64,000 bases of DNA from Haliotis rufescens (lineage: Eukaryota), in the NCBI RefSeq assembly GCF_023055435.1, contig NW_025963783.1, positions 620,001-684,000 of the forward strand, given 5' to 3'. Within the stretch, counting starts at the first letter, position 1. Each line of letters starts with the position of its first letter. Shown piece after piece: positions 1 to 64,000 of the stretch. Both the position numbers and the translations under genes were made by a program. Under the pieces are notes generated by a model. The model was given only the letters and a program-made list of their open reading frames with translations, did not search any database and had not been told where the DNA came from.

Positions 1-1050
1 CTTGGCCATCTTTTCAGGCTTCATTTCAGTTTTCACTCGCTCGATGTGTTTCTCAGTGGCGTCATCCAGTTGGTCCAGGAGTTGTCGTTCCTTCTTCTTT
101 ATGGCTTCTGTGACTGTCTGGATTATGGATCGGATCTGACACTGAACGGTGACTCTGTTCTTTATTACCTCAGTCCGTTTGGTTTCTAAATCTGTTAGCA
201 AACTGTCTGTTGCTTGTAAATGAGACGCTAGTCTTTCCTTAACTCCTGTAACACAGCTGATCAGTTCTGGCATAACGGATTCAAACGGTAAAATTGTGAT
301 ACAGGATCACTTTCTGTGATACAGGATGCAACAGGATTGACATTGCAGTTTCTTACAATCTTTGCAGTAGAACTGCATGCTTTGATCTGGATGTTGCTTA
401 CAGAATGGTTTGCGTCTTTGGTTGATTTTGACCTCTGTGGACAAGTCAGATTCGTCATGGTGACGAGTGGCAGGAATACGTCTGTGAGCCTTCTGGCATC
501 CCTCACAAAGACTGATGTCACAGTCAGCACACCAAGCAGTAGCTGGAGGTGCCGCTCCTTCATCACCACATAGGATGCACTTCGGGGTATCTGCAAGTAT
601 ACATACAAATGTGTCAGTTATTTTTCAACAATAGAACTATAATGTTACGAAATAACCTTTAACCTTTCAATGTGCATACAAGGAATTCACAAACCAGGGA
701 TATGAAGAACGTAGCAATGTTAGGATGAGTTCAGCACTGGTAGCCTATTCGGAAACACCTTTTGTCTTGGGATTAAATGAATCCAAGAGACCCTGAATCA
801 AAAAGCTGGGTTTCACCTCCTGTGCCCACTGTTCAACTGGCCTGAGTGAGTTGACTACTTTGGTCATCTTACGACAGAATGGACAGAGGAGAGACTTGGC
901 ACTGATGGCTTCTGGTCTGGTTTCAGTGTAGCTAACGACACATTTCCGACAAAATGTGTGATAACACACAAGTGTACAGGGGTCATCAAAGACGTCCATG
1001 CAGATGCTGCACGTCAAGAAGTTGTCTGTCAATTGTCGGTGCACTGTCAT
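1..1050 (-). pseudogene. TRIM-B1 (RING-B1-B2-CC-NHL family), premature stop after B-box2 (~191 aa); runs off the window start
   Basis: Exon 1050-759 encodes a C3HC4 RING (CSIC..C.H.FC..C..CPFC). GT-AG phase-1 intron 758-591. Exon 2 from 590 reads DTPKCILCGDEG..WCADCDISLCEGCQKAH (B-box1), then B-box2. An 11-nt insertion replacing 5 nt creates TGA at 309-307. Confidence 0.9.
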
Positions 1051-1314
1051 CTAAAATGTTAAGAGAGTAGATATGATACAACGATCTTTAAAGACATGAA
1101 GTAGTTTGTGCTCATGTTCCTCCGACACATGTTCATATTCCAATGCCTATCAATGACAACAATGCTGAACAAAATATAAAGGCGGTCAGTAAGTGAGAGC
1201 TCAGTTCGTGAGTTACAGTTTTGTGGATGAAAATATTAATGCCTGAAAATAGCTCTCATATCACAGTTCCCAAATAATCACTCCACAATACAAAGACAGA
1301 GTTATGTTTTGGAA

Positions 1315-1379
1315 CGCGTTATTGCGTTATTGAGCGAATCCCTTAAGGTGCACATGTGTGTCTATTGGATGCATGTGTA

Positions 1380-1459
<80 letters not shown>

Positions 1460-2720: not shown

Positions 2721-3451
2721 AGTGGATGTTGAAGCACATGTTGTATCGTGTGAAGGTATGTATATTTCAATATTACAATTACTATAAGTTACAAACAGGG
2801 CCCATTCTCAGACATTAAGCTGATTAGCCGTTATATTGCTGAATTATTGTTCAAAGAGCAGTCAATAAAACTTAATGACGACATTATGATGTAGCTGCTT
2901 GTCTATCGGTTCAAATATTGATTTGTATTGTTCACGTCAGGTATCACGAGAATTGCAATATTTTTTATGACGTAATGTATTCTGGTGACCGAAAACATGA
3001 GTGTCGCTCATATCTCCTCATGCAGTTTCATAAAAAAACTCCTGCCATCAATAGTAAGCTCAAAGAGGGTACAATTATTGAAAGACATAGACGTGTTAAC
3101 AATTTACAAAAATGAACCCTTGTAAACCAAGGTGACCACAAGCTGCCTTTACATACTAGTACAACCCGTGTGGACGTGTATCACTTTCTGCATAGAGCAT
3201 TGTTTGGACGATGTGTTTGCATTGATTTAGTTTGAACTTGTGTTTTTAATTTATTGCAATTTCATTTATAAATTTGTAAAGTTTGTTTTGGCCGCAGGTT
3301 TATATCACTGTTTAGTGTAGAATAAATAACGTGTGGGGTGTAGTGTATACTGTATAGCGTGTATATAATGTGCTGGCGAGTTTTACCAAGTACAATGTCT
3401 ACAAGTTTTTCGTAATCCTAGTGTTTCAATGTCATCCTGTTTCACTGCAAG

Positions 3452-3580
3452 GGGCAACAGTACGTCACGCGCTTCCGGCGACCTGTGTCGACAAGTGGAG
3501 CAACTGTGACTCCTACCCTCACTCGTGTGCGCCAGTGTACAAAGACTGGGCGTCCGCCAACTGTGCCCGCTTCTGCGTCT
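3452..3580 (+). pseudogene. ShKT-domain terminal exon, cassette 1 (last Cys and stop deleted)
   Basis: CVDKWSNCDSYPHSCAPVYKDWASANCARFC followed by a 14-nt deletion relative to the other copies, so the frame reads on to 3672. Confidence 0.8.
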
Positions 3581-4723
3581 TGGAATCTGTACCGAGAAGA
3601 GGAGGGACGCATATAGTCTGCACTACGAAATTTTGTTGCTGTAAACACATATTAAATGACAATGTCAGATGACATCAACATACGTCGAATATATTGCCTC
3701 CAAACAAGGTTATTATTAGAGAGTGGGCCTTTCTCTTTACTAATCTAGCTGGTAAACCAGGGATACTGTCTCAGTTAGAGCCCACGGTAGCCTTTATGAG
3801 TTTCGGGTAATTGGCTTCAACAGATTTACATTGACCGCAGACACAGAGAAGATGAATTTGAAAGAATGTTTTCTCAATTAGATTTGTAACAGCTGATCTC
3901 CTTCGGTATCAAGATTGATGAACGTACGTTACACGCAGGACCAACATGGCTACAGAGGGGGAGGATGTTGTGGGATGGGGCTGGGTTGAGGCGTATTGGG
4001 AGTAGTTTGTGTGTTTGTAATGGATACCCGCATGCAGTGTAATGAAACCCAACCAGTCACTCCTTGTTTTATTCCCTAAACATCGAAAACAGGGAAACAA
4101 CAAGTGTTATCTTTTAACGTGTTGTGCTATGACGCTGCCAAAGGATCGAAAGCTCAAAAGTTAGCTGTGCAGAGTTGCTGTGCGGAATTCATGCTTTGCC
4201 TTGATTATGATGCTTTTGCTGCCCGCACCATGCCCGTGCCTGTAGTTTCCCAACCTGTTTAACTGAAACGCCTTTCAAAGTTTACCAAAACTCACTCGCT
4301 GAAAGACTTTAACAGCGCCTAATTAACAGTATTTGAGTTACATCACGTCGACAGAGTGTTTGTGGTCGGACTCGATGTAGTTAATAGACGTTTGCAACTT
4401 TGGTGAAACCCACGTGCACAGGTATGGTGCTGACAACCCTAGAAACAATCAGGGCGAATCCGTGATCCGAACTAACGACATCAGGCATGGTCTAAGGGAA
4501 GCAACTCTGCACAGTCTATTACGCGCCTTACACAACTGAGCTCCTAGTTGGGAACTGAGCCAAACTGAATGGAATCAAATATTCTTTACATTACTTTTGA
4601 CTCATGTGATTCATGCATAGGAAATGTAGGATGATCATATAGGAATCGAATAAGTCAATTCTTTCAAATAGTTCAATAAATTACAGATACACTGATAAAC
4701 AATAAATAGACGACAAACATCAG

Positions 4724-4945: not shown

Positions 4946-5209
4946 TAAGCATTGGCAACATGGAAGTTTGTTTGACGTCCCGTATATACTTGATCAGTGT
5001 GACATGCCACAGGTATATGGAAGGTGTAAAAATAGCTTCATACTTCCTGGTTGTACATGGTCGTATGGTCCCTGCGTGTGCTGTATTATAAGATTGAGTT
5101 ATAGTGTCAGCAATATCGATCCAGATCCATTGTCAAAACTTGTTATTATTTAAAGTAACAGATGAAAGTGTTATTTAAACTACACGAGTCCATCTATTCC
5201 TAGAATAGA

Positions 5210-6044: not shown

Positions 6045-8458
6045 ATGGCGATGCACAAGACATTGACAAACAATTTACTGACTTGCAGCATCTGCATGGA
6101 CGTCTTTGATGACCCCTGTACACTTGTGTGTTATCACACCTTTTGTCGGAAATGTGTCGTTAGCTACACTGAAACCAGACCAGAAGCCATCAGTGCCAAG
6201 TCTCTCCTCTGTCCATTCTGTCGTAAGATGACCAAAGTAGCCAACTCAAACAGGCCAGTTGAAGAGTGGACACAGGAGGTGAAACCCAGCTTCTTGATTC
6301 AGGGTCTCATGGATTCCTTCGCTCCCTGCAGTCAAGGTATAAGTATACACCAGAGACCATGGTGGTTGGACTTCCACTCAATCCATATATTTTTAATTCA
6401 TCTTAAACACAGGCAACAGTATTTACCCATCTATGACAGACTCGTTTTTGTCCTAACATTACTTGAATATCTCTGTCATTTCTTTCAGTGGCACACTATT
6501 AGACCTGCAGTCAATCCTGTAACATATTTTCTCGTTTGCTTTTGAGACAAATTATTGATTTTCATGATGTTATTGACCTTGTCTAGTCACAATGACACTG
6601 TAATATTAACGCCTTTATTTTTGCATACGAACACAAAAATACATTTTTCAATTTTGTTGTTGTATTAAATTAATTTTGTAATTTTCAAGTTCATAGAATT
6701 ATATTTTTAGTGATATTCTAACATGTCTTCGCAAGAATGACTTTTAAGGTTTTTAAGACGAGTGCTGCTTGTAGGTTTTTTTATTACCAGTTGATACATG
6801 TAGGTATATTTTTTAACAGGTACTGTATTTTCTTTGTTGGAATTCCAAGATGAACCAACCTAAACGTGAAATGTGTACTTGATTATTCCAGTTATAGCAT
6901 CGCGTGTCAGTTTGATGAGTGTGGAAAACTTGATCCGATGTCAAATATCACTTTGGTGAAACCCATGAGCACAAGAATGGTACCGACATACCATGAAACA
7001 TAATGAAGGCGACTCTGGGATTTGAGGGATGCAGATGTGCAGATTTAGAAGACTGGGCCCCTCGTGCCCCTTAAATGGGTACTAAAGGAAAGGATAAATG
7101 TCTTTATAAAGATTATGCAAATAGGTGCTCTTATATTCATATTTCCTATTCATATGAAGCACTTTCTATATTTCTCTGTACACCACCTTAAATATTATCT
7201 ATGTCAGCATAATACATGTGTATATTTTTTTATCAGGAACAAATAACTGCAACTTATGTGATGAGGACGGGGAGACAACTCCAGCCAATGCTTGGTGCGT
7301 CGAATGTAATGTCTCGCTCTGTAATGGATGCCTGAAGGCACATAGACGTATCCCTGCCTCCCGTCACCATGACGTATCTGACTTGTCAAGGGATGTCAAG
7401 GTAAAGAAAAGACGCAAACCTATGTGTAAAGAACATCCAGATCAGAGGATTCAGTTCTACTGCAAGGACTGTAAGAAACTACAATGTCAATCTTGTTGCA
7501 TTTTACATCACAGAAAGTGTTAGTCCATTGTCTCGCTTGTATCTGTGTTGCCTGAAATGCAAAACACTCTTCAAACTGTGAAACAGAAACTAGAGTCTGA
7601 TTTAGCAACATCAAACACTCGCCTTGCAAAGAAGGAAGCACAATGTACTGAAATTAATGAGAACAAGTCAAGCCTTCAGTCTCAGGTCCGATCAGCAACC
7701 CACACCGCCATTGACTTGATAAAGAAGAAGGAAAGACAACTCCTGGAACAGATAGATGACGTGACAGAGAAACAAATAGGACAGATGAAAGGAGACATTA
7801 AGCGTGAGGAGATGGCCAGGCAGATGATTCGTCAACACTCGGAGTTGCTGGGCAGAGCTCTGGAGTCTGAGAGTGACGTGGACATCTGTGAGATGTATCT
7901 GTGGAGTGAGTCGGAAGAGGCAGCCACTGTGTGTGTCCCAGAGTCAGGTATGGAGGATGTATCTGGGGGCAAGGCTTGTTTCTTACATAATCGTTTTTTG
8001 ATGTGTGGGCCACTAAACGATCTACACTTGGGTGTGATTGATATCTTTGTTGAAGATGTTTTTGATTCTACATCTACAGCAGTTCTGTATGCCACAGTGG
8101 ACATACAGGCAGAAGATGATAAGAAGAAACCCAATGCTTATGACGTGGCAGTGGATTCGTACCTGGCAGAGTCCTCTGTCTGACTCCTCATGGGGATGTT
8201 GTGTTCACGTATCAGCCTAAACAACAGTGGCCTTTCTCTGGTGGAATCACTGAGACCAAAACAGGACATATCCTGGTTATAGATTGCAATGCAAAATGTG
8301 TGATTCAACTCAGCGCTTCTGGGACGTTTGTGAGGAAAGTGTTGACGTCACGTGATGGTATTACATCTCCGCATGGTCTCTACCTGTCTGAAAGTCAGCA
8401 CCTGTATGTCACCGATCGTGACTGTCTGAAGATCTACAGATTTACAAGAAACACCTAA
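6045..8458 (+). pseudogene. TRIM-A1; nonsense after B-box2 (~192 aa) plus a frameshifting deletion in the NHL domain
   Basis: Exons 6045-6336 and 7237-8458 (GT-AG, phase 1). GAG>TAG at 7521-7523. A 436-nt deletion (relative to A3) at microhomology ggcagtg, 8147-8153. Confidence 0.92.
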
Positions 8459-10323
8459 GATGTGGAAGCATATCGATTGTACCTGATAGAATCCGTCACC
8501 ATCTGAGTGACAATAGTTTATGTAAATATGAATTTCCAATACAAGAGAACAATCAGTCTAGACTGTCCGCCGAAACAGATACAAATTTGACGTGAAGTGC
8601 AAAATAGTTATGAAATTTATATGAATGGAACACTGATATTGAGTGATGACACCAGGTGTTCGCGAAAAGGGTAAGCATGTCCGGCCCTATCGGTAGCACT
8701 CGACAATCACACAATTTGCATGACAAAGGAAGTATTTGTCCCTGACGCGGCACAGATGTACTCGTAACGTGAGACGGCGGCCTGTAAACAAACCAGACAA
8801 TCAAGTGATCGATGAACCAGAATATCCATTGAAACGTTAGTGCATTAACTGATTTTGTTGAAACTAATCAAACCGATACGTTAATTTTAACCTACGAATT
8901 AAGTGCACTGATTCTGCTACTTAAAAGAAAGAAGAACGTTTAATAACATTTATGTGAGGCAGTGATTGGGGGATGCGCAGTTTTATTGTGCGCACGCCAG
9001 GTTTTCGCGATGTTGTGTCTGACATTGATGTGGAGCTGTGAGACATCGATGTGGTATATGTGAACAATGAATGCACAGAGCTGGAATTGTCACCCGTCAA
9101 ACAAATATTCCGTCACTGAATGTGCATGTATTACGTGTATATTTAAGTTAGCGGGGAGGGGAGGGGAGGGCGGATTTCGGGCAAGAGCAAAGGTCACCAA
9201 CAACGTGTGCCAGTTGTTGGAGGCGACTTAATGGATCAGGTGACCTGGTTGATTGTACGTCATCGTATCCCAAATACATGGATCGATGCTCATGATATCA
9301 ATCACTGGACTATCTGACCACACTGGATTAACTACAGCCCACCATCATATAGCTGGAATATTGCCGAGTGCTGCTACGAACAACAAACAAACAATTGGCG
9401 CACATGTTTTTGTGGCATGAAAGCGACTTCTGGAAAGTAAATCCTTGTTGCCTCGTGAAGTATATAATTATATATTTGTAAATACAATAGAACTCTGATA
9501 TATACACCTTTAACCACTTCCTGTCAGTTTAAGTGTATTTGTAAACATTTACTTGCATATCCAGGTGTTTACATTTCTGTCATAATAAAAGTGCAGTCAC
9601 TACCTTTGTACAGTTTGTCTTTCTTGTTTAAATGAATACATAACACACACCACACCACTATGGAACCCGTTCTACGAAGTGAACTTATGTTAAAAGATGT
9701 GAAAAGGGATCGTTTCAGCACTTGGTTTCTCCGTGGAACACGACGCATGTCTTTGTAACAAACATCAGTAAACGCTTTGTGATGTGAAGGGAGAAATGGT
9801 GGTTAAAATCTCATGTGACCCCGTTACTTACAAATACATATTGTTTTCATATATATTGATGCTGTTTTGTTCATTCATCCAAGGACAAGTTTAGAAAACA
9901 TGAGCGATCACAACACTGCCGACAAGCTTGTTAATTTACATATACTTATAATCCCATGAAACAGTCGTGAATGCCATGGTTATCTATCAGAAATATGGAA
10001 AATAGTTTACAGAAATACATCCGTTTCATCGACAGTATTAGTACCTCGCCAAGGCTCTGCACTCACTATATATCCATCACTATCCCCCATCAATATAACA
10101 TTCTCGTCCCATAATGCCGACCTTATAGTTCTGGCCCACTGAGATACCACGCCGCAGTATAACGTGGCTGCACACAGTCACATTTAACTGACACCGAGGC
10201 TGTCAGCCTTGTTTTATCACCTCAAAATAGTAATCGAATCACGCCAAAGCCAAAATATACAACACTATAAATACAATAGTTTTTATGCACATGTCAATAC
10301 AAAGGGGGACACAGCTTAACAAA

Positions 10324-11635
10324 AGGATGTCCACACAGGGAGGCGACCCGGATCCTGCTGTCAGGGTAGTCGGTTTCATGGCCGTCAGACCAAAGTACTT
10401 CTTCCTCGTTGAAATGTATGATTGGAGAATAAGGTCAGGGTTCACCTCAATCACTATTATCTCCCTTGTCTCGGGAAGGGTCACGGCCATGTGATGGGCA
10501 TTAAGTTTTGCAATCCGCCGAGGGGGGCTCTGAACAGAGAGCTTACTCTGACAGGGTTGAGTATTGCGTGTGTAGAAGGATTTGACGCACTTGTTATTAT
10601 CAGTTACAACTATGGTCTGTACCGCCTTCATTGAACACTGCCACGTCATAAACATGAGGTAAACTTGTCTCATCTTCTGTTTGTATGTCCACTGTGTCGT
10701 GCAGAACTGATGTCGATGTAGAATCAAACACATCTTCATATATGGTATCAATTTTACCCAAGCTCACCTCGTGTATATTGTTAGAGATATCTTCACAATC
10801 ATGCATAAAACATACTTTCTCTCTCAGTTCATATTTTATATCTGAATCTGGGTCGTATACGGTGGGAAACTGCTCTGACTCACACCACAGGTACATCTCA
10901 TAGATGTCCATTTGACTTCCAGTTGACATTGCAGTTTCTTACAATCTTTGCAGTAGAACTGCATGCTTTGATCTGGATGTTGCTTACAGAATGGTTTGCG
11001 TCTTTGGTTGATTTTGACCTCTGTGGACAAGTCAGATACGTCATGGTGACGAGTGGCAGGAATACGTCTGTGAGCCTTCTGGCATCCCTCACAAAGACTG
11101 ATGTCACAGTCAGCACACCAAGCAGTAGCTGGAGGTGCCGCTCCTTCATCACCACATAGGATGCACTTCGGGGTATCTGCAAGTATACATACAAATGTGT
11201 CAGTTATTTTTCAACAATAGAACTATAATATTACGAAATAACCTTTAACCTTTCAATGTACATACAAGGAATTCACAAACCAGGGATAGAAGAACGTAGC
11301 AATGCTAGGATGAGTTCAACACTGGTAGCCTATTCGGAAATACCTTTTGTCTTGGGATTAAATGAATCCAAGAGACTCTGAATCAAAAAGCTGGGTTTCA
11401 CCTCCTGTGCCCACTCTTCAACTGGCCTGTTTGAGTTGACTACTTTGGTCATCTTTCTACAGAATGGACAGAGGAGAGACTTGGCACTGATGGCTTCTGG
11501 TCTGGTTTCAGTGTAGCTAACGACACACTTCCGACAAAATGTGTGATAACATACCAGTGTACAGGGGTCATCAAAGACGTCCATGCAGATGCTGCACGTC
11601 AAGAAGTTGTCCGTCAATTGTCGGTGCACTGCCAT
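10324..11635 (-). pseudogene. TRIM-B2; several deletions
   Basis: RING exon 11635-11344 is intact; exon 2 starts at 11176. A 376-nt frameshifting deletion at ~10922, small deletions at ~10590-10617, and ~630 nt covering the C-terminal NHL blades and 3' flank deleted at ~10324. Confidence 0.92.
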
Positions 11636-12018: not shown

Positions 12019-12181
12019 NNNNNNNNNNNNNNNNNNNNNNNNNNNNNNNNNNNNNNNNNNNNNNNNNNNNNNNNNNNNNNNNNNNNNNNNNNNNNNNNNN
12101 NNNNNNNNNNNNNNNNNNNNNNNNNNNNNNNNNNNNNNNNNNNNNNNNNNNNNNNNNNNNNNNNNNNNNNNNNNNNNNNNN
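12019..12181. other. N-gap at the cassette microsatellite (also 24855-25073, 40095-40312, 52669-52864)
   Basis: All four N runs occupy the position of the (GT)n tract that is resolved in cassette 1. Confidence 0.9.
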
Positions 12182-37800: not shown

Positions 37801-38034
37801 AGGTATAATTTCTGGAGCCAGGAATAGCTCTCTCTTTGTACGGACTTTTATTGAAAAAAGGGACGGGCATGTCTTCAGGTTATAGAGTGAAGCCAAACGT
37901 TCTGATGCGTGGTTTGGACAAATTTCTTCAGTTAACAAGCTGGCATTTTATGTGGCATTTTTGGTATGTCACTTATACCAATGTCTGTGATCAAACAATT
38001 AAGGTGGTTATGCTTACATATTATGGTGATGTTA

Positions 38035-45055: not shown

Positions 45056-47823
45056 ATGGCGATGCACAGGACATTGACAGACAATTTCCTGACTTGCAGC
45101 ATCTGCATGGACGTATTTGATGACCCCTGTACACTTGTGTGTTATCACACATTTTGTCGGAAATGTGTCGTTAGCTACACTGAAACCAGACCAGAAGCCA
45201 TCAGTGCCAAGTCTCTCCTCTGTCCATTCTGTCGTAAGATGACTAAAGTAGCCGACTCAAACAGGCCAGTTGAAGAGTGGGCACAGGAGGTGAAACCAAG
45301 CTTCTTGATTCAGGGTCTCATGGATTCCTTCGCTCCCTGCAGTCAAGGTATAAGTATACACCAGAGACCATGGTGGTTGCACTTCCACTCAATCCATATG
45401 GTTTTAATTCATCTTCAACACAGGCAACAGTATTTACCCATCTATGACATACTCGTTTTTGTCCTAACATTACTTGAATATCTCTGTCATTTCTTTCAGT
45501 GGCACACTATTAGGCCTGCAGTTAATCCTGTAACATATTTGCTCGTTTGCTTCTTAGACAAAGTATTGATTCTCATGATTTTGAAGTAATGTCATTGACC
45601 TTGTCTGGTCACAATGCCACGTAATGTTAACGCCTTTCTTATTGCATACGAACACAAAAATACATTTTTCAATTTATTGTTGTATCGACTTTTTATTACC
45701 AGTTGATAGGTACGTTTTATTAACAGGTACTGTATTTTCTATGTTGGAAAACCAAAATGAACCAACCTAAACGTGAAATGTGTACTTGAGTATTCCAGTT
45801 ATAGCATCGCATGTCAGTTTGATGAGTGTGGAAAACTTGATCCGATGTCAAATGTCACTTTGGTGAAACCCACGAGCACAATAATGGTGCGGACATACCA
45901 TGAACATAATGAGGGCGACTCTTGGATTTGTAGGATGCAGACATGCAGATTAAGAAGGGCGCGCCACTGGTGCCCCTTAAATGGGTACTGATAAAGGAAA
46001 GGATAAATGTCTTTATAAAGATGACGCAAATAGGTGCTCTAATATTCATATTTCCTATTCATGTGAAGCACTTTCTAAGTACATCCTAACATAACCTATA
46101 TTTCTCTGTAAACAACCTTAAATATAAACCATGTCAACATAATACATGTGTATATTTCTTTTTAGGAACAAATAACTGCAACTTATGTGATGATGATGGG
46201 GAGGCAACTCCAGCTACATCTTGGTGTTCTGACTGTGAAGTCTCGCTGTGTGGTGGATGTCTTAAGGCCCATGTTCGTAATCCTTCCTCCCGTCACCATG
46301 ACGTATCGGACATGTCAAGGGATGTCAAGGTGAAGAAAAGACGCAAACCTCTGTGTAAAGAACATCCAGATCAGAGGATGCAGTTCTACTGCAAGGACTG
46401 TAAGAAACTACAATGTCAATCGTGTTGCACCTTGTATCACAGAAAGTGTGAGTCCATTGTCTCGCTTGAATCTGTGTTGCCTGAAATGCAAAACACTCTT
46501 CAAACTGTAAAACAGAAACTAGAGACTGATTTAGCAACATCAAACACTCGCCTTGCAAAGAAGGGAGCACAATGTACTGAAATTAATGAGAACAAGTCAA
46601 GCCTTCAGTCTCAGGTCCGATCAGCAACCCACACCGCCATTGACTTGATAAAGAAGAAGGAGAGACAACTCTTGGAGCAAATAGATGTCATCACAGAGAA
46701 ACAAATAGGACAGCTGAAAGGAGACATGAAGCGTGAGGCGATTGCCAGGCAGATGATTCGTCAACACTCGGAGTTGCTGGGCAGAGCTCTGGAGTCTGAG
46801 AGTGACGTGGACATCTGTGAGATGTATCTGTGGAGTGAGTCGGAGGAGGCAGCCACTGTGTCTGTCCCAGAGTCAGGTATGGAGGATGTATCTGGGGGCA
46901 AGGCTTGTTTCATACACGATCGTCATCTGATGTGTGGGAAACTAAACGATCTACACTTGGGTGTGATTGATATCATTGTTGAAGATGTTTTTGATTCTAC
47001 ATCTACAGCAGTTCTGTATGACACAGTGGACATGCAGGCAGAAGATGATAAGGAAAAACCCAGTCCTTTTGACGTGGCAGTGTTTGTTGTCGACAACACA
47101 GACACCATAGTTGTCACAGATTATGACAACAAGTGTGTGAAATCCTTCTACAAAAGAAACAAGAAGTCATGTCAGAGTAAGCTGGGGGTACAAAGCGCTC
47201 CTCTATGTATTGCAAAATGAAACAATAATAAAATGGCTGTGACTCTCCATGGCACTAAGGAAATAATAATAGTAGAAGTGAAGCCTGAACTGGTTCTTCA
47301 ATCATCCATCTCTACAAGGAAGGTGTATGTGGGTCTGACATCCCTGACACCGACAACCTTGGCAGCAGGATCACTGGATCCTCCCTGTGTGGATATCTTG
47401 GACATGGCGGGGAATGTGTTGAAGACCCCGGATCCTGTCACAGATGGAGAGAAACTTGTATCAGATCCTTGGTTCCTCAGTACCACCAGGCAGGGTAACA
47501 TCCTCATGTCTTGCGGGGAATACGGAGCTCGCAGTGTCCTCTGTCTGACTCCTCATGGAGATGTTGTGTTCAGGTATCAGCCTACACAGCCGTGGCCTTC
47601 CCTTCGTGGAATCACTGAAACCAACACAGGACATATCCTGGTTATATATCTCAATGCAAATTGTGTGTTTCAACTCAGCGCTTCTGGGACGTTTGTGAGG
47701 AAAGTGTTGACGTCACGTGATGGTATTACATCTCCGCATAGTCTCTGCCTGTGTGAAAGTCAGCACCTGTATGTCATCGATGATGACTGTTTGAAGATCT
47801 ACAGATTTACAAGAAACACCTAA
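45056..47823 (+). pseudogene. TRIM-A4; single nonsense codon in the second NHL blade (448 aa product)
   Basis: Exons 45056-45347 and 46166-47823. TTA>TGA at 47218-47220, after which the frame continues to the normal stop. Confidence 0.9.
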
Positions 47824-50473: not shown

Positions 50474-52231
50474 CTATTCAAAATGACCGAGATCACTCTT
50501 CATGTCCTCTTGGTTTGGTGCGTAGAACCTGTAGACCATCACACAGTGGCGGTTGGTGACGTACAGATGCCTCAGCTTATCAAAGTACAGGCCATAAGGG
50601 AAAGTGATGCCATCCCTTGACGTCAGTACGTCTCTCAACCATGTGCCTGAACTACTCAAATGAACCACTTTGTTTGACATGTCGTCAACAACAAGCATGT
50701 CGCCTGTGTTTGTTCCAGTGATGCCGCATGGATTCATTGCTCGGTGTTGTCCTGTGGGTACATAATTAAACACAACATCTCCGTTTGGTGTCATACATAG
50801 CAAATGACTTCTTGGGGCATGACTGCAAGACACCAGGATGTAACCTTGACTGGTGGTAGATAGGAATAAAGGATCTGATACAAGGATTCCCCCATCTGTG
50901 ACACGATTCAGCGTCCTCAATACATTCCCCGCTATGTCCAGGATGTCCACACAGGGAGGCGACCCGGATCCTGCTGCCAGGGTAGTCGGAGTCAGGGCTG
51001 TCAGACCAAAGTACTTCTTCCTCGTTGAAATGTATGATTGAAGAACAAGGTCAGGGTTCACTTCAATCACTATTATCTCCCTTGTCTCGGGAAGGGTCAC
51101 GGCAATGTGATGGGCACTAAGTTTTGCAATCCGCCGAGGGGGGCTCTGAACAGAGAGCTTACTCTGAAATGGTTGAGTATTGCGTGTGTAGAAGGATTTG
51201 ACGCACTTGTTGTTATTATCAGTTACAGCTATGGTGTCTGTACCACCTTCATTGAACACTGCCACGTCATAAACATGAGGTAAACTTGTCTCATCTTCTG
51301 TTTGTATGTCCACTGTGTCGTGCAGAACTAATGTCGATGTAGAATGAAACATATCTTCATATATGGTCTTAATTTCACCCAAGCTTACCTCGTGTATATT
51401 GTTACAGATCTCTTCACAATCATTCATAAAACATACTTTCTCTCTCAGTTCATATTTTATAACAGATTCAAACGGTAGAATTGCCTCACACTTTCTGTGA
51501 TACAAGATGCAACAGGATTGACATTGCAGTTTCTTACAATCTTTGCAGTAGAACTGCATGCTTTGATCTGGATGTTGCTTACAGAATGGTTTGCGTCTTT
51601 GGTTGATTTTGACCTCTGTGGACAGGTCAGATACGTCATGGTGACGAGTGGCAGGAATACGTCTGTGAGCCTTCTGGCATCCCTCACAAAGACTGATGTC
51701 ACAGTCAGCACACCAAGCAGTGGCTGGAGGTGCCGCTCCTTCATCACTGCATAGGATGCACTTCGGGGTATCTGCAAGTATACATACAAATGTGTCAGTT
51801 ATTTTTCAACAATAGAACTATAATATTACGAAATAACCTTTAACCTTTCAATGTACATACGAGGAATTCACAAACCAGGGATATGAACAACGTAAATATG
51901 TTAGGATGAGTTCAGCACTGGTAGCCTATTCGGAAATACCTTTTGTCTTGGGATTAAATGAATCCAAGAGACCCTGAATCAAAAAGCTGGGTTTCACCTC
52001 CTGTGCCCACTCTTCAACTGGCCTGTTTGAGTTGACTACTTTGGTCATCTTTCGACAGAATGGACAGAGGAGAGACTTGGCACTGATGGCTTCTGGTCTG
52101 GTTTTAGTGTAGCTAACGACACATTTCCGACAAAATGTGTGATAACACACAAGTGTACAGGGTTCATCAAAGACGTCCATGCAGATGCTGCACGTCAAGA
52201 ACTTGTCTGTCAATTGTCGATGCACTGCCAT
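50474..52231 (-). CDS. TRIM-B5: open 529-aa ORF, RING-B1-B2-NHL lacking the coiled coil
   Basis: Exons 52231-51940 and 51771-50474 total 1590 nt with no internal stop. In-frame 402-nt deletion at ~51460 (FESV|IKYE). A small frameshift at ~50523 alters only the tail. Confidence 0.85.
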
Positions 52232-53389
52232 CTAAAATGTTAAAATAAAAATATTGGCATTCTCAACTTAACATCATACACCTTTTCATCCATAAGAACC
52301 CATTTTTGTTTTTGATTGATATACGGGCAGTTTTTCAATAATGAACTCACAGAGAGTAGATATGGATACAAGATCATTACAAGACATGAGGTAGCTTGTT
52401 GTGTGCTCATGTACCTCCAGCACATGTCCATGTTCCAATGCCTAATTATGACTACAATCCTTAACCACATATAAAAGCAGTCAATACGTGATTGGTCAGT
52501 TCATGAGTTACAGTTTTGTGGATGAAAATATTAATGCTTGAAAATAGCTCAGTGTCATTTCACAGTTCCCAAATAATCACTCCACGCTACAAAAGCAAAG
52601 TTATGTTTTGGAAAGCGTTATTGCGTGAATCCCTTAAGGTGGATGTGTGTGTGTCTGTGTGTTTATTGNNNNNNNNNNNNNNNNNNNNNNNNNNNNNNNN
52701 NNNNNNNNNNNNNNNNNNNNNNNNNNNNNNNNNNNNNNNNNNNNNNNNNNNNNNNNNNNNNNNNNNNNNNNNNNNNNNNNNNNNNNNNNNNNNNNNNNNN
52801 NNNNNNNNNNNNNNNNNNNNNNNNNNNNNNNNNNNNNNNNNNNNNNNNNNNNNNNNNNNNNNNNTTAATGTCGGTTTCATATAGCTAGCCAACTGAGACA
52901 CCATGCCGCAGTTTAACGTGAATAGTGAGTGAGTGAGTTGGGATTAACGCCAGTTTTAACAGTATTCCAGTTATATCACGCGTCAGTTAATTTGGGAGGA
53001 AAGCCCGAAGTGATGCAGATCTCAGACCTTTACCTCTTCTGTGAAACCCACGAGCACGGGTACGGTGCTGACAAACCTAGAAACATAATTGGGGCGAACC
53101 GGGATTCGAATCCCCAATCAAAGGTTTCTGGCGTGCCCAAGGGATGCAACTCTGCACAGGGAACTGCATCCCCTTAGACGACTGGGGCACCCGCGCCCCC
53201 CGTGACCGTACATGTGGCCCGGTATTGATATTCAAAGGTGGCCTTAATAATTCCAACGTGATGCGGATAAAAATTCAACAGTACTTTATAGGATATATTT
53301 TGGATGAAATATGCTGATTTATTATATCTTTCTACCAAACATATCCCGACCGTCGCTAACACATACATTCTTTGTCTTAACTTCTCTAT

Positions 53390-58162: not shown

Positions 58163-60890
58163 ATGGCGATGCACAAGACATTGACAGACAATTTCCTGAC
58201 TTGCAGCATCTGCATGGACGTCTTTGATGACCCCTGTACACTTGTGTGTTATCACACATTTTGTCGGAAATGTGTCGTTAGCTACACTGAAACCAGACCA
58301 GAAGCCATCAGTGCCAAGTCTCTCCTCTGTCCATTCTGTCGTAAGATGACCAAAGTAGTCAACTCAAACAGGCCAGTTGAAGAGTGGGCACAGGAGGTGA
58401 AACCCAGCTTCTTGATTCAGGGTCTCATGGATTCCTTCGCTCCCTGCAGTCAAGGTATAAGTATACACCAGAGACCATGGTGGTTGGACTTCCACTCAAT
58501 CCATATAGTTTTAATTCATCTTCAACACAGGCAACAGTATTGTCCCATCTATGACAGACTCGTTCTTGTCCTTGAATAGCTCTGTCATTTCTTTCAGTGG
58601 CACACTATTAGGCCTGCAGTCAATCCTGTAACATATTTGCTCGTTTGCTTCTGAGACAAAGTTTTGATTCTCATGATTTTGAAGTAATGTTATTGACCTT
58701 GTCTGGTAACAATGCCACATAATGTTAACGCCTTTCTTATTGCATACGAACACAAAAATACATTTTTCAATTTATTGTTGTATCGACTTTTTATTACGAG
58801 TTGATAGGTACGTTTTATTAACAGGTACTGTATTTTCTATGTTGGAAAACCAAAATGAACCAACCTAAACAAGAAATGTGTATTTGAGTATTCCAGTTAT
58901 AGCATCGCATGTCAGTTTGATGAGTGTGGAAAACTTGATCCGATGTCAAATGTCACTTGGGTGAAACCCACGAGCACAAGAATGGTGCCGACATACCATG
59001 AAACATAATGAGGACGACTCTGGGATTTGTGGGATGCAGACATGCAGATTTAGAAAACTGCGTCACTGGTGCCCCTTAAATGGGTACTGATAAAGGAAAG
59101 GATAAATGTCTTTATAAAGATGACGCAAAAAGGTGCTCTTATATTCATATTTTCTGTTCATGTGAAGCACTTTCTAAGTACATCCTAACATAACCTATAT
59201 TTCTCTGTAAACAACCTTAAATATGAATCATGTTGACATAATACATGTGTATATTTCTTTTTTAGTAACAAATAACTGCAACTCATGTCATGATGATGGG
59301 GAGGCAACTCTGGCTACATCTTGGTGTTCTGACTGTGAAGTCTCGCTGTGTGGTGGATGTCTTAAGGCCTATGCTCGTAATCCTGCCTTCCGTCACCATG
59401 ACGTATCTGACTTGTCAAGGGATGTCAAGGTGAAGAAAAGACGGAAACCCATGTGTAAAGAACATCCAGATCAGAGGATGCAGTTCTACTGCAAGGACTG
59501 TAAAAAACTACAATGTCAATCGTGTTGCCTCTTGTATCACAGAAAGTGTGAGTCCATTGTCTCGCTTGAATCTGTGTTGCCTGAAATGCAAAACACTCTT
59601 CAAACTGTAAAGCAGAAACTAGAGACTGATTTAGCAACATCAAACACTCGCCTTGCAAAGAAGGAAGCACAATGTACTGAAATTAACGAGAACAAGTCCA
59701 GCCTTCAGTCTCAGGTCCGATCAGCAACCCACACCGCCATTGACTTGATAAAGAAGAAGGAAAGACAACTCCTGGAACAGATAGATGACGTCACAGAGAA
59801 ACAAATAGGACAGCTGAAAGGAGACATGAAGCGTGAGGAGATGGCCAGGCAGATGATTCGTCAACACTCGGAGTTGCTGGGCAGAGCTCTGGAGTCTGAG
59901 AGTGACGTGGACATCTGTGAGATGTATCTGTGGAGTGAGTCGGAGGAGGCAGCCACTGTGTGTGTCCCAGAGTCAGGTATGAAGGATGTATCTGGGGGCA
60001 AGGCTTGTTTCATACACGATCGTCATCTGATGTGTGAGGAACTAAACGATCTACACTTGGGTGTGATTGATATCATGTTTGAAGATGTTTTTGATTCTAC
60101 ATCTACAGCAGTTCTGTATGACACAGTGGACATACAGGTAGAAGATGATAAGAAGAAACCCTATGCTTTTGACGTGGCAGTATTTGTTGTTGACAACACA
60201 GACACCATAGTTGTAACAGATTATGGCCACAAGTGTGTGAAATCCTTCTACAAAAGAAACAAGAAGTCATGTCAGAGTAAGCTGGGTGTACAAAGCGCCC
60301 CTTTATGTATTGCAAAATTAAACAACAATAAAATGGCTGTGACTATCCTTAACAGTAAAGAGATAATAATAGTAGAAGTGAAGCCTGAACTGGTTCTTCA
60401 ATCATCCATCTCTACAAGGAAGGGGTATGTGGGTCTGACATCCCTGACACCGACAACCCTGGCAGCAGGATCCGTGTCTCCTCCCTGTGTGGACATCCTG
60501 GACATGGCGGGGATTGTGTTGAGGACCCTGGATCCTGTCACAGATGGAGAGATACTTGTATCAGATCCTTACTTTCTCAGTACCACCAGGCAGGGTAACA
60601 TCCTCGTGTCTTGCTGTGAAGAGGAAGCTGGCAGAGTCCTCTGTTTAACTCCTCATGGAGATGTTGTGTTCAGGTATCAGCCTATCCAGCAGTGGCCTTG
60701 CCTTCGTGGAATCACTGAAACCAACACAGGACATATCCTGGTTATAGAATGCAATGTAAATTGTGTGTTTCAACTCAGCGCTTCTGGGACGTTTGTGAGG
60801 GAAGTGTTGACGTCACGTGATGGTTTTATCCGCATAGTCTCTACCTGTCTGAAAGTCAGCACCTGTATGTCACCGATTATGACTGTGTAA
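58163..60890 (+). CDS. TRIM-A5: 638-aa ORF with frameshifted last NHL blade
   Basis: Exons 58163-58454 and 59266-60890. A net 4-nt loss at ~60825 replaces the last blade (ancestral stop at 60917-60919). B-box1 His>Tyr (CLKAYAR). Confidence 0.8.
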
Positions 60891-63800
60891 AGATCTACAG
60901 ATTTACAAGAAACACCTAAGATGTGGATGCATAACGATTGTTCCTGATAGAATCCGTCACCATCTGAGTGACAATAGTTTATGTAAATAAGAGAACAATC
61001 TTTCTAGAGTGTCCACCGAAACAGTTAAAATTTGACGTAAAGTGCTAAATAGTTATGAAATTTATATGAATGGACCACTGATATTGAGTGATGACTCCAG
61101 GTGTTCGCGAAAAGGGTAAGCATGCCTGGCCCTATCGGTAGCACTCGCCAATCACACAATTTTAATGAATAAGGAGGTATTTGTCCCTGACGCGGCAATG
61201 CTGTACTCGTATCGTGAGACGGCGGCCTGTAAACAAACCAGACAATCAAGTGATCGATGAACCAGAAAATCCAGTGACACGTTAGTGGATTAACTGATTT
61301 TGTTGAAACTAATAAAACCGATACGTTAATTTTAACCTTCAAATTAAGGGCACCGATTCTGCTTCTTAAAAGAATGAAGAACGTTTAAGAACTATTATGT
61401 GAGGCAGTGGTTGGGGGTGCGCAGTTTTATTGTGCCCACACCAGGTGTTCGCGATGTTTGTGTCTGACATTGATGTGGAGCTGAGAGACATCAGTGTGGT
61501 ATATGTGAACAATGAATGCACAGAACTGGAATTGTCACCCGTCACACAAATATTCCGTTATTGAATGTGCATGTATAACGTGTATATTTAAGTTAGCGGG
61601 GAGGGCGGATTTTGGGAACGAGCAAAGGTCACCAACAACGCGTGCCAGTTGTTGGAGGCGACCTAATGGATCAGGTGACCTGGTTGAGTGCATGTCATCG
61701 TATCCCAAATACATAGATCGATGCTCATAATGTCAATCACTGGACTTTCTGACCAGACTCGATTAATTACAGACCACCCTCATATAGCTGGAATATTGCC
61801 GAGTGCTGCGACGAAAAAAACAACAACAATTGGCGACTGCTGGAAAGTTAAGCCTTATTGCCTCGTGAAGTATATAATCATATATTTGTAAATACAATAA
61901 AACTCTGATAATTAAACCATTAACCACTTCCTGTCAGTTTAAGTGTATTTGTAAAAATTTACATGCATATCCAGGTGTTTACATTTCTGTCATAACAAAA
62001 GTGCAGTCACTACCTTTGTACAATTTTTTTCTTGTTTAAATGAATACATAACACACACCACACCACTATGGAACCCGTTCTACGACGGGAATTTATGTTA
62101 AAAGATGTGAAAAGAGATCGTTTCCGCGGTTGATTCTTTTCTTTGAACACGACGCATGTCTTTGTAACAAACATCAGTTAACGCTGTGTGATGTAAAGGG
62201 AGAAATGGTGGTTAAAATCTCATGTTCCCCCCGTTACTTACAAATACATATTGTTTCCATATATATTGATGCTGTTTTGTTCATTCATCCAAGGACAAGT
62301 TTAGAAAATCTGAGCGAATGTGTCTGTTCGTCGACACCAACCACAACACTGCCGACATAATCCCACGAAACAGTCGTGAAGCCATGGTTATCTATCAAAA
62401 CTATGGAAAATACATCCGTTTCATCGACAGTATTAGTACCTCGCCAAGGCTCTGAACTCACTTTATACCACTTGGCACAGATAACACGTACTTCTTCGTT
62501 GCCCAAAGGTTATTTCTCTAAATTATCAGTTTGTATCAATCGGTAAAACGGTATATGATTGGCTACGGGTGTGTCATGAATTGCCAACAGAATCCTACAT
62601 AGCATATATGTCTCTGTTCTCGAAATAATATTCTGCCTTGATCAAAAAAATATAAATGGCAAATGTTTCCATATCTTATTTTAAACCGTTTATTTGGTGC
62701 AGAAGAGACTTGTGATTAAGATTGCTAAGCCTATAGATGCAAGTGCGACATCCGCGTAGAAGCAGGCTGTAGTTTCTCTAATGGCAGATATGTTTCAATG
62801 AAAAAAGTCACCAATTATATATGACAATGTCCATTCATTTCACATTTGATTTACCAGGGGTATTTGTGTTTATTGGTATATCTCAGATTCTGTTTTGTCT
62901 CTCAATGCGAGATGTTATGGTTCAGTTTTCACCCGTGTTTCATTGCCGGGAACAACAGTGACGTCATCAACTGTTTGAATGTTTGGCAGAGTAAGAGATG
63001 GGCTTTATACATTGTTTCCATGCAGGCACTAGGACCCAAGCATCTGGCGTGACAAGCCAAGCTTTAACTACTCGTCTACCCCACCTTTACGGCCAACCCC
63101 TCCCGCGCCTTCTGGAAGATCTGTGTTTGAATCTTCAGAAACCCATGCTTGTAAGAGTTGACAAACGGGATAGGGTGGTCAGGGTCGCTGACTTGGTTGA
63201 TGCATGTCACCGTATTCCAATCGATCAATGGTCATGTTAATCACTGGAACTTCAGACCGCCGTCTTGTAGCTTGAAGAGTGTTGAGAGCGGCGTTAATGA
63301 ACCTACCGTCCAACCAACCAACAAACAGTAAACAGTAGCAAGAGGTGACTAATATATTAAGGTGTTATGAAGAAATGAAGCTTTTCTCATTTTGACGTGA
63401 CAGTTTGACTCCGTTGGATACAGATTCGTGAGGTATTAGTGATTTGTTTGTTTGTTTGTTGTTTATCGCCGCACTCACCCACTTGACCTGCAGACCGGCG
63501 TCTTGTAGCTGGAAAAGTGGAGTGCGACGTTAATCAACCTACCGTCCAACCTGTCAGCCTCGTTTTATCCCCTTATAAAAGAAATGGAAGTAATCGAATC
63601 ACGTCAAAACAACCGAGCGATAAATGGCAAAATTAAACAACACTGTAAATACAATAGTTTTTATGCACATGTCAATACAAAAGGGGACACAGGTGAACAA
63701 TATGATTTAATTTTTCTTTAGAAAAAGTTATTGGTTCGTAAACATATTGTTTCATAACAATGCGCTTGCGTCCCCTGTGCATCTATCATTACCTCATCAT

Positions 63801-63967
63801 CAGGATCGAACACAGTCAGTTTTCGGACCACGGAAGTAGGAGTAAACACACCTACATTGACTTCACACTGGTTGTGTTTCTCAATCTCGTTATATATATA
63901 ACTGAAACACTATTCAAAGGGAGATCTATACAAAATCATTCAGTCGTTCATTCACCGAGACCACCCT

Positions 63968-64000
63968 TCATGTACATCTTGGTTTGGTGCGTGTTATGAA
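63968..64000 (-). CDS. 3' end of TRIM-B6; the array continues beyond the window
   Basis: Matches the B3 end (FITRTKPRCT*) and its downstream flank. Confidence 0.85.
   Translation of the reverse strand, partial: FITRTKPRCT

What the first reader, a model, noticed from the sequence alone, without database searches (positions are those of the whole stretch)
1..64000. Tandem array of head-to-head TRIM-NHL gene pairs: candidate animal analogue of paired sensor/helper immune receptors
Seen: the amplified unit is always the pair (B minus, A plus, ATGs 4.5-5.9 kb apart), at least five times. A and B share only about half their residues in the coiled coil by eye, so they are old paralogues kept linked. 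Known: TRIMs dimerise through the coiled coil and many are antiviral E3 ligases; plant NLR pairs (RRS1/RPS4, RGA4/RGA5, Pik-1/Pik-2) are head-to-head with a variable sensor and a conserved helper. Inference: a co-regulated A/B heterodimeric immune module undergoing birth-and-death. I know of no description of such a paired TRIM system but cannot search.
Basis: partly seen in the sequence, partly recalled or inferred. Interest (0 to 1): 0.9.

Follow-up and report, generated by a model that had tools for sequence, protein, structure and literature searches.

The report
Amplified two-gene TRIM-NHL cassette in abalone
The red abalone genome carries a cassette of two oppositely oriented TRIM-NHL ubiquitin-ligase genes copied 14 times, one type evolving fast and the other conserved, but most copies are dead and nothing shows the two must work as a pair.

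Summary
The window (Haliotis rufescens, unplaced scaffold C5) has five head-to-head B(-)/A(+) TRIM-NHL pairs with ATGs 4.5-5.9 kb apart. The array runs on to 7 A + 7 B. A second, gap-free array of 7 + 7 lies on chromosome-scale contig C79.

A and B are old paralogues: dS is about 0.65, coiled-coil identity is 45%, and the split predates the Haliotis crown. The cassette was amplified recently (dS about 0.06).

- **Birth-and-death is clear.** 21 of 28 copies carry stops, frameshifts, large deletions or lost splice sites.
- **Selection is strongly asymmetric.** The propeller loops of A have dN/dS of about 1.9-2.6. The propeller of B has about 0.16.
- **An obligate pair is not supported.** None of 12 head-to-head pairs has both members intact. 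Three intact genes sit at array edges with no partner. H. rubra and H. asinina have B but no detectable A. Probable RNA contig sets show A without B in 3 of 4.
- **The heterodimer test is weak.** It scored 0.56 against a best control of 0.00 and cannot discriminate within a family.

The spacer also holds conserved ShK-domain exons. The scan had noted related features on this and a neighbouring window.

The parts
1..1050 (-). B0 (C5 copy B_c5_1): RING exon 1050-759 and the start of the large exon from 590 downwards, which runs off the window's left end. Broken by an 8-bp insertion and 2-bp deletion at codons 192-194 and by several 3' deletions.
6045..8458 (+). A1: RING exon 6045-6336, large exon 7237-8458. 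Pseudogene with TAG at codon 193 and deletions of 360, 63 and 10 bp.
10154..11635 (-). B1: RING exon 11635-11344 (open), large exon 11176-10154. Heavily degraded, with a 376-bp deletion removing the coiled coil and many further indels.
12019..12181 (.). N run in the spacer, 384 bp upstream of the B1 ATG. Its flanks are colinear with gap-free units.
17040..19923 (+). A2: the only intact gene in the window (648 aa; NCBI LOC124110440). RING exon 17040-17331 (phase 1, GT donor), intron, large exon 18269-19923 (AG acceptor). It encodes B-box 1, B-box 2, the coiled coil, a disordered linker and a six-bladed NHL propeller.
22520..24622 (-). B2: RING exon 24622-24339 (3- and 5-bp deletions, stops), large exon 24170-22520 (1-bp deletion at codon 362, 27-bp deletion, stop). 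Pseudogene.
24855..25073 (.). N run in the spacer, 233 bp upstream of the B2 ATG.
29089..31817 (+). A3: RING exon 29089-29372 with an 8-bp deletion at codon 25 (frameshift inside the RING). The large exon 30160-31817 is open.
32021..38120 (.). Extra segment found only in this unit. It truncates B3. Part of it (32507-36283) is 93% identical to C79:1237927-1241640, outside the other array. No Pfam domain was found in its ORFs.
38125..39642 (-). B3: RING exon 39642-39351 (open). The large exon from 39182 is truncated after about codon 452, so the propeller is lost.
40095..40312 (.). N run in the spacer, 453 bp upstream of the B3 ATG.
45056..47823 (+). A4: RING exon 45056-45347, large exon 46166-47823 with an in-frame TGA at codon 449 (47218-47220).
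50474..52231 (-). B4: RING exon 52231-51940, large exon 51771-50474. A 402-bp in-frame deletion removes the coiled coil, and a 4-bp deletion changes the last residues. The ORF is open (529 aa) but has no dimerisation helix.
52669..52864 (.). N run in the spacer, 438 bp upstream of the B4 ATG. Its flanks match one C79 spacer at 97.5% and 98.8%, colinearly.
58163..60919 (+). A5: RING exon 58163-58454, large exon 59266-60919 with a 4-bp deletion at codon 618 (frameshift in the last propeller blade) and H133Y at an invariant B-box 1 position.
3439..3582 (+). ShK-domain exon (type 2) in the B0/A1 spacer, on the same strand as A. Homologous exons lie at 14177-14338, 26970-27101, 42305-42451 and 55889-56053. 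A second ShK exon (type 1) lies at 54402-54569.

Best explanation
This is a birth-and-death tandem array of a cassette of about 13 kb. The cassette holds two old, oppositely oriented TRIM-NHL paralogues plus one or two ShK-domain exons. An ancestral inverted duplication, older than the Haliotis crown group, gave A and B. Much later the whole segment was amplified by unequal crossing-over into two arrays of seven cassettes each. Because the repeat period spans both genes, every duplication copies both, so the amplified unit being always the pair follows from mechanics and needs no selection for pairing. After amplification most copies decayed independently. Three A copies and three or four B copies remain intact. 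A is a RING E3 ligase whose NHL propeller loops are under diversifying selection, which fits a target-recognition surface in conflict with a pathogen or another fast-evolving ligand (inferred). B is a conserved paralogue under purifying selection that also exists alone in other abalone. Shown: gene structure, domain fold, copy number, lesions, selection asymmetry and relative ages. Inferred: E3 activity, an immune role, and independence of A and B function.
For: - **Identity and structure.** The species is H. rufescens. A2 equals LOC124110440 at 100%. Pfam finds a RING, two B-boxes and weak PML_CC and NHL matches. The AF2 model (pLDDT 79.7) has a helix at 198-322 and a propeller at 378-647. 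The best Foldseek hits are the NHL domains of TRIM2, TRIM3, Thin, Mei-P26, TRIM71 and Brat, with target TM about 0.8.
- **Array layout.** Two arrays of 7 A + 7 B alternate strictly.
- **Unusual orientation.** Other TRIM-NHL clusters in this genome are same-strand arrays.
- **Relative ages.** dS(A,B) is 0.6-0.75 in the large exon against 0.05-0.09 within a type. In the tree, A is sister to a B clade that includes H. rubra and H. asinina.
- **Decay.** Lesions differ between copies. The intact copies were checked for ATG, GT and AG signals.
- **No coupling of integrity.** 0 of 12 head-to-head pairs have both members intact. The intact genes B_c5_6, B_c79_1 and A_c79_7 sit at array edges with no head-to-head partner.
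- **No co-evolution signal.** The A and B distance matrices are uncorrelated under either pairing (r = 0.06 and -0.13). RING-exon identity between A and B is 89.8% for partners and non-partners alike.
- **Selection.** NHL omega for A is 1.86 [1.09-4.17] in intact copies. For A loops it is 1.93 [1.14-3.59] over all copies and 2.59 [1.16-9.75] in intact copies. For B it is 0.16 [0.07-0.32].
- **Expression.** A-type contigs are present in four probable RNA sets and B-type in only one. In X3 the A contigs match the intact copy A_c79_2 at 17 of 17 diagnostic positions.
Against: - The variable-A and conserved-B asymmetry is what a sensor/helper pair would show.
- The coiled coils of A and B are predicted to pair. 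The ipSAE score is 0.56 and the best of 3 controls is 0.00, which the tool rates as weak support. By the tool's calibration, 51 of 78 solved complexes and 2 of 108 mismatched pairs reached its pass mark. However, only 5 of those 78 solved complexes scored 0.60 or under, as did all 4 mismatches that passed (of 180, counting the harder ones). The three runs agree in at least 96% of contacts, and the partner's pLDDT is at least 85.
- The RING exon has a lower dS between A and B (0.27 against about 0.65). This shows past sequence exchange between the two genes and so a long physical association.
- Both types are retained in H. cracherodii on one chromosome.
- A helper could act in trans, so broken neighbours do not exclude cooperation.
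- Only one individual's assembly was examined. Part of the C5 array is joined across gaps.
Confidence: 0.6

Rival explanations
1. One reading: A and B form a co-regulated heteromeric immune module. A is the variable sensor and B the conserved helper, analogous to head-to-head plant NLR pairs. In a looser form, a few intact B copies serve several A copies in trans.
For: Propeller evolution is asymmetric, with A omega 1.9-2.6 in loops and B omega about 0.16. The paralogues are old yet still adjacent. The A-B coiled-coil prediction has weak support, 0.56 against a best control of 0.00, with the calibration caveats given under the best explanation. Past exon-1 homogenisation is indicated by dS 0.27. 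Heteromultimeric TRIM cooperation between adjacent paralogues is known for TRIM5alpha and TRIM34 (PMC7179944).
Against: 0 of 12 head-to-head pairs have both members intact, and intact genes at array edges lack a partner. The only open B in the window lacks the coiled coil. No A-type protein was found in H. rubra or H. asinina, although B is present there. A was seen without B in 3 of 4 probable RNA contig sets. The spacer is 4.5-5.9 kb, holds ShK exons, and both genes have upstream non-coding exons. The complex test cannot tell which family member binds.
Confidence: 0.12
2. Assembly artefact. The C5 array would be a mis-scaffolded or uncollapsed haplotype version of the C79 array. The copy number and the many lesions in the window would then not describe a separate locus.
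For: C5 is an unplaced 1.03-Mb scaffold. N runs recur at the same place in four consecutive units. Both arrays have exactly seven cassettes. One block of about 16 kb is 96.5-98% identical between the arrays.
Against: The flanks of the C5 array do not match the C79 flanks. The closest A and B relatives between the arrays are not in colinear order, and most differ by 5-8% for A. The gap flanks are colinear with gap-free units. The C79 array has no N at all and shows the same cassette and the same kind of decay. The finding therefore stands even if C5 were discounted.
Confidence: 0.1
3. A non-immune role. Like the canonical TRIM-NHL proteins Brat, Mei-P26, LIN-41/TRIM71 and TRIM2/3, A and B would bind RNA or cytoskeletal targets. 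The fast evolution of A would then reflect another conflict (reproductive, or against transposon RNA), or relaxed constraint in a redundant array.
For: The closest solved folds are RNA-binding NHL domains. No induction or infection data were available. Strand residues of A have omega of about 0.9, so some relaxation is present.
Against: Loop omega exceeds 1, with a lower confidence bound of 1.14-1.16, also in the intact copies. Relaxation alone does not give that. Large lineage-specific arrays with pseudogenes are typical of defence-type TRIMs (established knowledge; for example the TRIM5 and TRIM22 dynamics in PMC2151084, listed but not read).
Confidence: 0.15

Closest known systems
TRIM-NHL proteins (class VII TRIMs: TRIM2, TRIM3, TRIM32, TRIM71/LIN-41, Brat, Mei-P26, Thin/Abba, Wech)
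   Same: The order RING, B-box 1, B-box 2, coiled coil and six-bladed NHL propeller. The propeller superposes on the TRIM2 and TRIM3 NHL domains at target TM about 0.8.
   Different: There is no filamin/Ig domain between the coiled coil and the propeller; a disordered linker of about 50 residues sits there instead. These genes belong to a lineage-specific expansion of hundreds of copies (774 candidates), not to the conserved single-copy developmental genes. The A propeller is under diversifying selection.
Mammalian TRIM5/TRIM6/TRIM22/TRIM34 cluster (TRIM5alpha with TRIM34)
   Same: Adjacent TRIM paralogues. One is under strong positive selection in its C-terminal recognition domain. There is gene gain and loss between species, and cooperation between two neighbouring paralogues is documented (PMC7179944).
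   Different: The recognition domain there is PRY-SPRY, not NHL. That cluster is not a repeated two-gene cassette. Cooperation has been shown experimentally there and not here.
Head-to-head plant NLR pairs (RRS1/RPS4, RGA4/RGA5, Pik-1/Pik-2)
   Same: Divergent orientation of two paralogous receptors, one variable and one conserved (reviewed in PMC9528088, listed but not read; otherwise established knowledge).
   Different: The protein family is unrelated. Plant pairs are retained jointly intact and are genetically co-dependent. Here no head-to-head pair is jointly intact, and no integrated decoy domain is seen.
Tandem immune-gene expansions in molluscs
   Same: A large lineage-specific tandem array with pseudogenes in a mollusc genome. 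Expansion of innate immune gene families in oysters is documented (PMC4346834, seen).
   Different: I found no description of a two-gene inverted TRIM cassette in the library searched. The other TRIM-NHL clusters of this genome are same-strand arrays.

Membership tests
TRIM-NHL (class VII tripartite-motif E3 ligases) | N-terminal C3HC4 RING finger | tested here: met
   Pfam zf-C3HC4 and zf-RING_UBOX match with E 1e-8 to 3e-9. All zinc ligands are kept in the intact copies.
TRIM-NHL (class VII tripartite-motif E3 ligases) | One or two B-box zinc fingers followed by a coiled coil | tested here: met
   Pfam B-box and ANCHR-like B-box hits, plus a weak PML_CC hit. The AF2 model has two B-box folds and a helix at 198-322.
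TRIM-NHL (class VII tripartite-motif E3 ligases) | C-terminal six-bladed NHL beta-propeller | tested here: met
   Pfam NHL is only weak at 25 bits. However, the model's propeller (pLDDT above 90) matches the TRIM2, TRIM3, Thin, Mei-P26, TRIM71 and Brat NHL domains at E 1e-11 to 1e-14.
TRIM-NHL (class VII tripartite-motif E3 ligases) | Filamin/Ig domain before the NHL domain (present in TRIM2, TRIM3 and TRIM71 but not in all members) | tested here: not met
   Residues 323-370 are disordered in the model, and no filamin hit appears in Pfam. This feature is not required for the class.
TRIM-NHL (class VII tripartite-motif E3 ligases) | E3 ubiquitin-ligase activity | not testable with these tools
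   Needs an in vitro ubiquitination assay.
Paired sensor/helper immune receptors (plant NLR-pair logic) | Head-to-head orientation with a short shared promoter region | tested here: inconclusive
   The orientation is met. The spacer is 4.5-5.9 kb, both ATGs follow acceptors so the transcription start sites are unknown, and ShK exons lie between the genes.
Paired sensor/helper immune receptors (plant NLR-pair logic) | Both members retained intact together | tested here: not met
   0 of 12 head-to-head pairs are jointly intact. Only one tail-to-tail neighbour pair (B_c79_7 with A_c79_7) is.
Paired sensor/helper immune receptors (plant NLR-pair logic) | Variable sensor and conserved helper | tested here: met
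   NHL omega is 1.86 for A against 0.16 for B. 51 of 278 A sites have three or more residue states, against 9 of 286 B sites.
Paired sensor/helper immune receptors (plant NLR-pair logic) | Physical hetero-complex and genetic co-dependence | tested here: inconclusive
   Complex prediction gave weak support: 0.56 against a best control of 0.00. A pass does not tell which family member binds. Co-dependence cannot be tested here.
Paired sensor/helper immune receptors (plant NLR-pair logic) | Linkage conserved across species | not testable with these tools
Only protein-level presence is known: A and B in H. cracherodii, and B only in H. rubra and H. asinina.
Birth-and-death multigene family | Tandem duplicates, frequent independent pseudogenisation, and copy content that differs between species | tested here: met
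   There are 28 copies, and 21 are broken at differing positions. The copy phylogeny is star-like. H. cracherodii has one A and one B in the 90% protein clusters.

The most novel reading that the evidence does not exclude
The cassette is a working two-component TRIM system. Diversified A ligases recognise targets through hypervariable propeller loops and need the conserved B paralogue for signalling or stability, as a coiled-coil heteromer in cis or in trans. This would be an animal TRIM counterpart of sensor/helper receptor pairs. The conserved ShK-domain exons may be a third co-amplified component.
Probability: 0.12. Interest if true: 0.85.

Novelty: new variant of a known kind. Interest (0 to 1): 0.5.

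Why it matters
Abalone suffer from herpesvirus and withering-syndrome epidemics, and the red abalone is a conservation and aquaculture species. A recently amplified, partly decayed array has one ligase type under positive selection at its propeller loops. That makes it a concrete candidate for a fast-evolving intracellular recognition or restriction system in a mollusc. More generally, it shows how a two-gene cassette can mimic a paired-receptor architecture by duplication mechanics alone. It also gives a testable case: three intact A copies and three or four intact B copies, with known positions. This lets one ask whether TRIM paralogues cooperate as sensor and partner outside vertebrates.

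Tried and rejected
- **Haplotig test.** The C5 flanks hit only dispersed repeats and contig C592, not the C79 flanks. I rejected a simple haplotig.
- **Co-duplication signal.** The A and B distance matrices were uncorrelated under both pairings, so no pair-level history could be recovered.
- **Pair-specific RING-exon conversion.** Partners are no more alike than non-partners, 89.8% against 89.8%. Only an older, general homogenisation is supported.
- **Complex prediction.** The verdict was weak support, 0.56 against a best control of 0.00. The tool states that such a pass is more often wrong than right unless likely beforehand, that it may come from memory of solved TRIM dimers, and that it does not tell which family member binds. 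I do not count it as evidence for a specific A-B pair.
- **RNA evidence.** Only Logan contig sets guessed to be RNA were available. They show presence, not level or absence.
- **Ancestral unit from array edges.** The edge homologies overlap, so I draw no conclusion on whether the first duplicated unit was the convergent or the divergent pair.
- **Literature.** Seven searches found no description of a paired TRIM cassette. Several returned noise, for example NHL read as lymphoma.
- **Extra segment at 32-38 kb.** Pfam found no domain in its ORFs.
- **Search hygiene.** No typed or joined spliced model was sent to any search tool. Searches used window references exon by exon or database protein ids. 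Exons were joined only inside local scripts for translation and dN/dS.
Full report
**What is there**

The window is Haliotis rufescens (red abalone) DNA, at positions 620001-684000 of an unplaced 1.03-Mb scaffold (C5) in a 1.33-Gb assembly. A self-comparison shows repeat units of 12-15 kb that are 90-96% identical. Each unit carries two TRIM-type genes on opposite strands.

Both genes share one structure:
- a 292-nt RING exon in phase 1, whose ATG directly follows a polypyrimidine-AG acceptor, so there must be a non-coding exon further upstream;
- one large exon of about 1.65 kb encoding B-box 1, B-box 2, the coiled coil, a linker and the C-terminal domain.

Pfam finds the RING and B-boxes clearly and the NHL repeat only weakly. 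An AlphaFold2 model of the intact copy A2 has mean pLDDT 79.7. It shows a long helix at 198-322, a disordered stretch at 323-370 and a confident beta-propeller at 378-647. The best Foldseek matches for the propeller are the NHL domains of TRIM2, TRIM3, Thin, Mei-P26, TRIM71 and Brat, with target TM about 0.8. These are therefore TRIM-NHL proteins without a filamin domain.

**The observation**

The five head-to-head pairs are real. Coiled-coil identity between A and B is 45%.

The array continues on both sides of the window to 7 A + 7 B (C5:601.7-686.1 kb). A second array of 7 + 7, in the opposite orientation and without a single N, lies at C79:1,135,185-1,224,850 on a 32.8-Mb contig. The flanks of the two arrays do not match, and their closest copies are not in colinear order. 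I therefore treat them as two loci.

Other TRIM-NHL clusters of this genome are same-strand arrays. The inverted cassette is special to this subfamily.

**The gaps**

The four N runs lie 233-453 bp upstream of the B start codons. They are in the spacer, and no reading frame crosses them. Four of the five head-to-head junctions in the window do cross a gap.

I tested continuity by mapping 400 bp on each side onto gap-free units. Both flanks land colinearly in one spacer each time, with an implied missing piece of about 50-450 bp. I neither looked up nor filled the missing letters. Gap-free junctions in the window (1-6545), elsewhere on C5 and at all six C79 junctions show the same arrangement.

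**Age and history**

Synonymous divergence between A and B is 0.6-0.75 over the large exon. Within A or within B it is 0.05-0.09. The A/B split is thus roughly ten times older than the amplification.

In a protein tree rooted with other Haliotis TRIM-NHLs, the A clade (H. rufescens and H. cracherodii) is sister to a B clade. That B clade contains H. rufescens, H. cracherodii, H. rubra and H. asinina. The split therefore predates the Haliotis crown.

Searches with A found no A-type protein in H. rubra or H. asinina; their best hits are B orthologues at 53-54% identity. H. cracherodii has one A and one B on one chromosome in the 90% protein clusters.

The RING exon has a lower A-B dS of 0.27. 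This points to an intermediate-age homogenisation of exon 1. Head-to-head partners are no more alike there than non-partners.

**Decay**

I projected every copy on an intact reference and listed its lesions.

| Type | Intact copies | Notes |
|---|---|---|
| A | A2 of the window (648 aa), A_c79_2, A_c79_7 (649 aa each) | All invariant zinc ligands kept |
| B | B_c79_1 (656 aa), B_c79_7 (655 aa) | Fully intact |
| B | B_c5_6 (648 aa) | Just right of the window; 8-residue deletion in the last blade |
| B | B_c79_6 (664 aa) | Altered C-terminal end; H189Q at an invariant B-box 2 histidine |
| B | B4 of the window (529 aa) | Open, but has lost the whole coiled coil |

All the other copies carry stops, frameshifts, large deletions, a broken RING exon or a lost acceptor, mostly at different positions.

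No head-to-head pair out of 12 has both members intact. Three of the intact genes (B_c5_6, B_c79_1, A_c79_7) sit at array edges with no head-to-head partner at all. The only jointly intact neighbours (B_c79_7 with A_c79_7) are tail-to-tail. The pairwise distance matrices of A and of B are uncorrelated under either pairing.

**Selection**

The two genes evolve very differently.

| Region and set | dN/dS [95% bootstrap interval] |
|---|---|
| A propeller, three intact copies | 1.86 [1.09-4.17] |
| A propeller, all 14 copies | 1.23 [0.88-1.81] |
| A inter-strand loops, all 14 | 1.93 [1.14-3.59] |
| A inter-strand loops, intact | 2.59 [1.16-9.75] |
| A strands, all 14 | 0.92 |
| B propeller, intact copies | 0.16 [0.07-0.32] |
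| B propeller, all 14 copies | 0.37 |

The excess in A is concentrated in the inter-strand loops, so it is more than relaxation.

**Expression**

No run on record as RNA held the sequence. Several small contig sets guessed to be RNA did. I laid four of them on A2's large exon through B2's large exon.

- All four cover the A exon and about 0.6 kb beyond its stop.
- Some contigs begin at the acceptor (18267).
- The intergenic 21.0-21.6 kb is nearly empty, which argues for RNA.
- B is covered in only one set (X3). There, a contig runs off unlike sequence at B's acceptor.
- Contigs show presence, not absence or level, so this is only weak evidence against strict co-expression.
- In X3 the A contigs carry the letters of the intact C79 copy A_c79_2 at 17 of 17 diagnostic positions and never those private to window A2. 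Expression of the window's own copies is therefore not shown.

**Heterodimer**

I sent one job with B-box 2 plus coiled coil of A and of B. The verdict was weak support: score 0.56, best of 3 controls 0.00.

The tool's own counts for its pass mark are 51 of 78 solved complexes and 2 of 108 mismatched pairs. However, only 5 of those 78 solved complexes scored 0.60 or under, as did all 4 mismatches that passed. The three runs agree in at least 96% of contacts, and the partner's pLDDT is at least 85.

The tool also warns that a pass may reflect memory of solved TRIM dimers and does not tell which family member binds. The result shows compatibility, not specificity.

**The spacer**

Every head-to-head spacer holds a ShK-domain exon on A's strand, 2.1-2.9 kb upstream of A's ATG. 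All six cysteines are kept in nearly all copies. Some spacers hold a second ShK exon.

Together with the upstream non-coding exons, this means the spacer is not a simple compact bidirectional promoter. Start sites could not be mapped here.

**Reading**

The strict co-amplification of A and B is what unequal crossing-over gives once the repeat period spans both genes. It needs no selection for pairing. The pattern of decay, the unpartnered intact genes, B without A in other abalone, and A without B in transcript sets all argue against an obligate cis pair.

The selection asymmetry, the long adjacency and the weak complex result keep a looser, trans-acting sensor/partner model alive at about one in eight.

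I found no description of such a cassette in the paper library. The nearest animal precedent for cooperating neighbouring TRIM paralogues is TRIM5alpha with TRIM34 (PMC7179944).

**Limits**

- Only one individual's assembly was examined.
- dN/dS is from pairwise counts with bootstrap, not site models.
- Searches were made by reference or by database protein id.

Noticed in passing
window 3439-3582, 14177-14338, 26970-27101, 42305-42451, 54402-54569, 55889-56053 (+): ShK-domain exons (Pfam PF01549, 27-30 bits) with all six cysteines conserved lie in every head-to-head spacer, on A's strand. A second type occurs only in the longer spacers. The same two exons also lie beyond the right edge of the C79 array (about 1227.6 and 1230.3 kb). 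They may be a third co-amplified gene or a relic.
   Followed up: partly
window 32021-38120: An extra 6-kb segment is present only in this unit and truncates B3. Part of it is 93% identical to C79:1237927-1241640, outside the other array. Its ORFs have no Pfam domain.
   Followed up: partly
window codon 193 of A1 (about 7521-7523) and C5 copy A_c5_1; B0 at about window 310: Two neighbouring A copies share the same GAG to TAG stop at codon 193, at the end of B-box 2. The B copy lying between them has an 8-bp insertion and 2-bp deletion at codons 192-194. This could be shared descent, gene conversion or coincidence.
   Followed up: partly
A copies, codons 99-201 (window A2 18271-18579): Among A copies the B-box region has dS 0.22-0.28, against 0.05-0.08 elsewhere. 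Two old B-box 1 sequence types therefore coexist in the array. Neither is recently derived from B (dS to B is about 0.7).
   Followed up: partly
window 20630-20829 and 21630-21829: Two short stretches in the A2-B2 tail-to-tail spacer have summed contig depths of 30,000-180,000 in all four contig sets, with many go-back joints. They are a highly repeated, probably transcribed element.
   Followed up: no
window 25817-26640, 43363-43889, 54851-55570, 57239-57511: Low-complexity and microsatellite-like tracts (CT/GT-rich, short tandem units) give long spurious ORFs in the spacers. The N runs sit next to such tracts.
   Followed up: no
C79:1202783-1204920 (B_c79_6): An otherwise open B copy has H189Q at a B-box 2 histidine that is invariant in 63 family members, and a 1-bp deletion that extends the C-terminus. 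It is probably impaired.
   Followed up: partly
runs X9, X11, X13, X14 (organisms B-E): Contig sets of four other coded organisms hold about a third of the 31-mers of A2's large exon. A-type genes are therefore present at a few percent divergence in several close relatives.
   Followed up: partly
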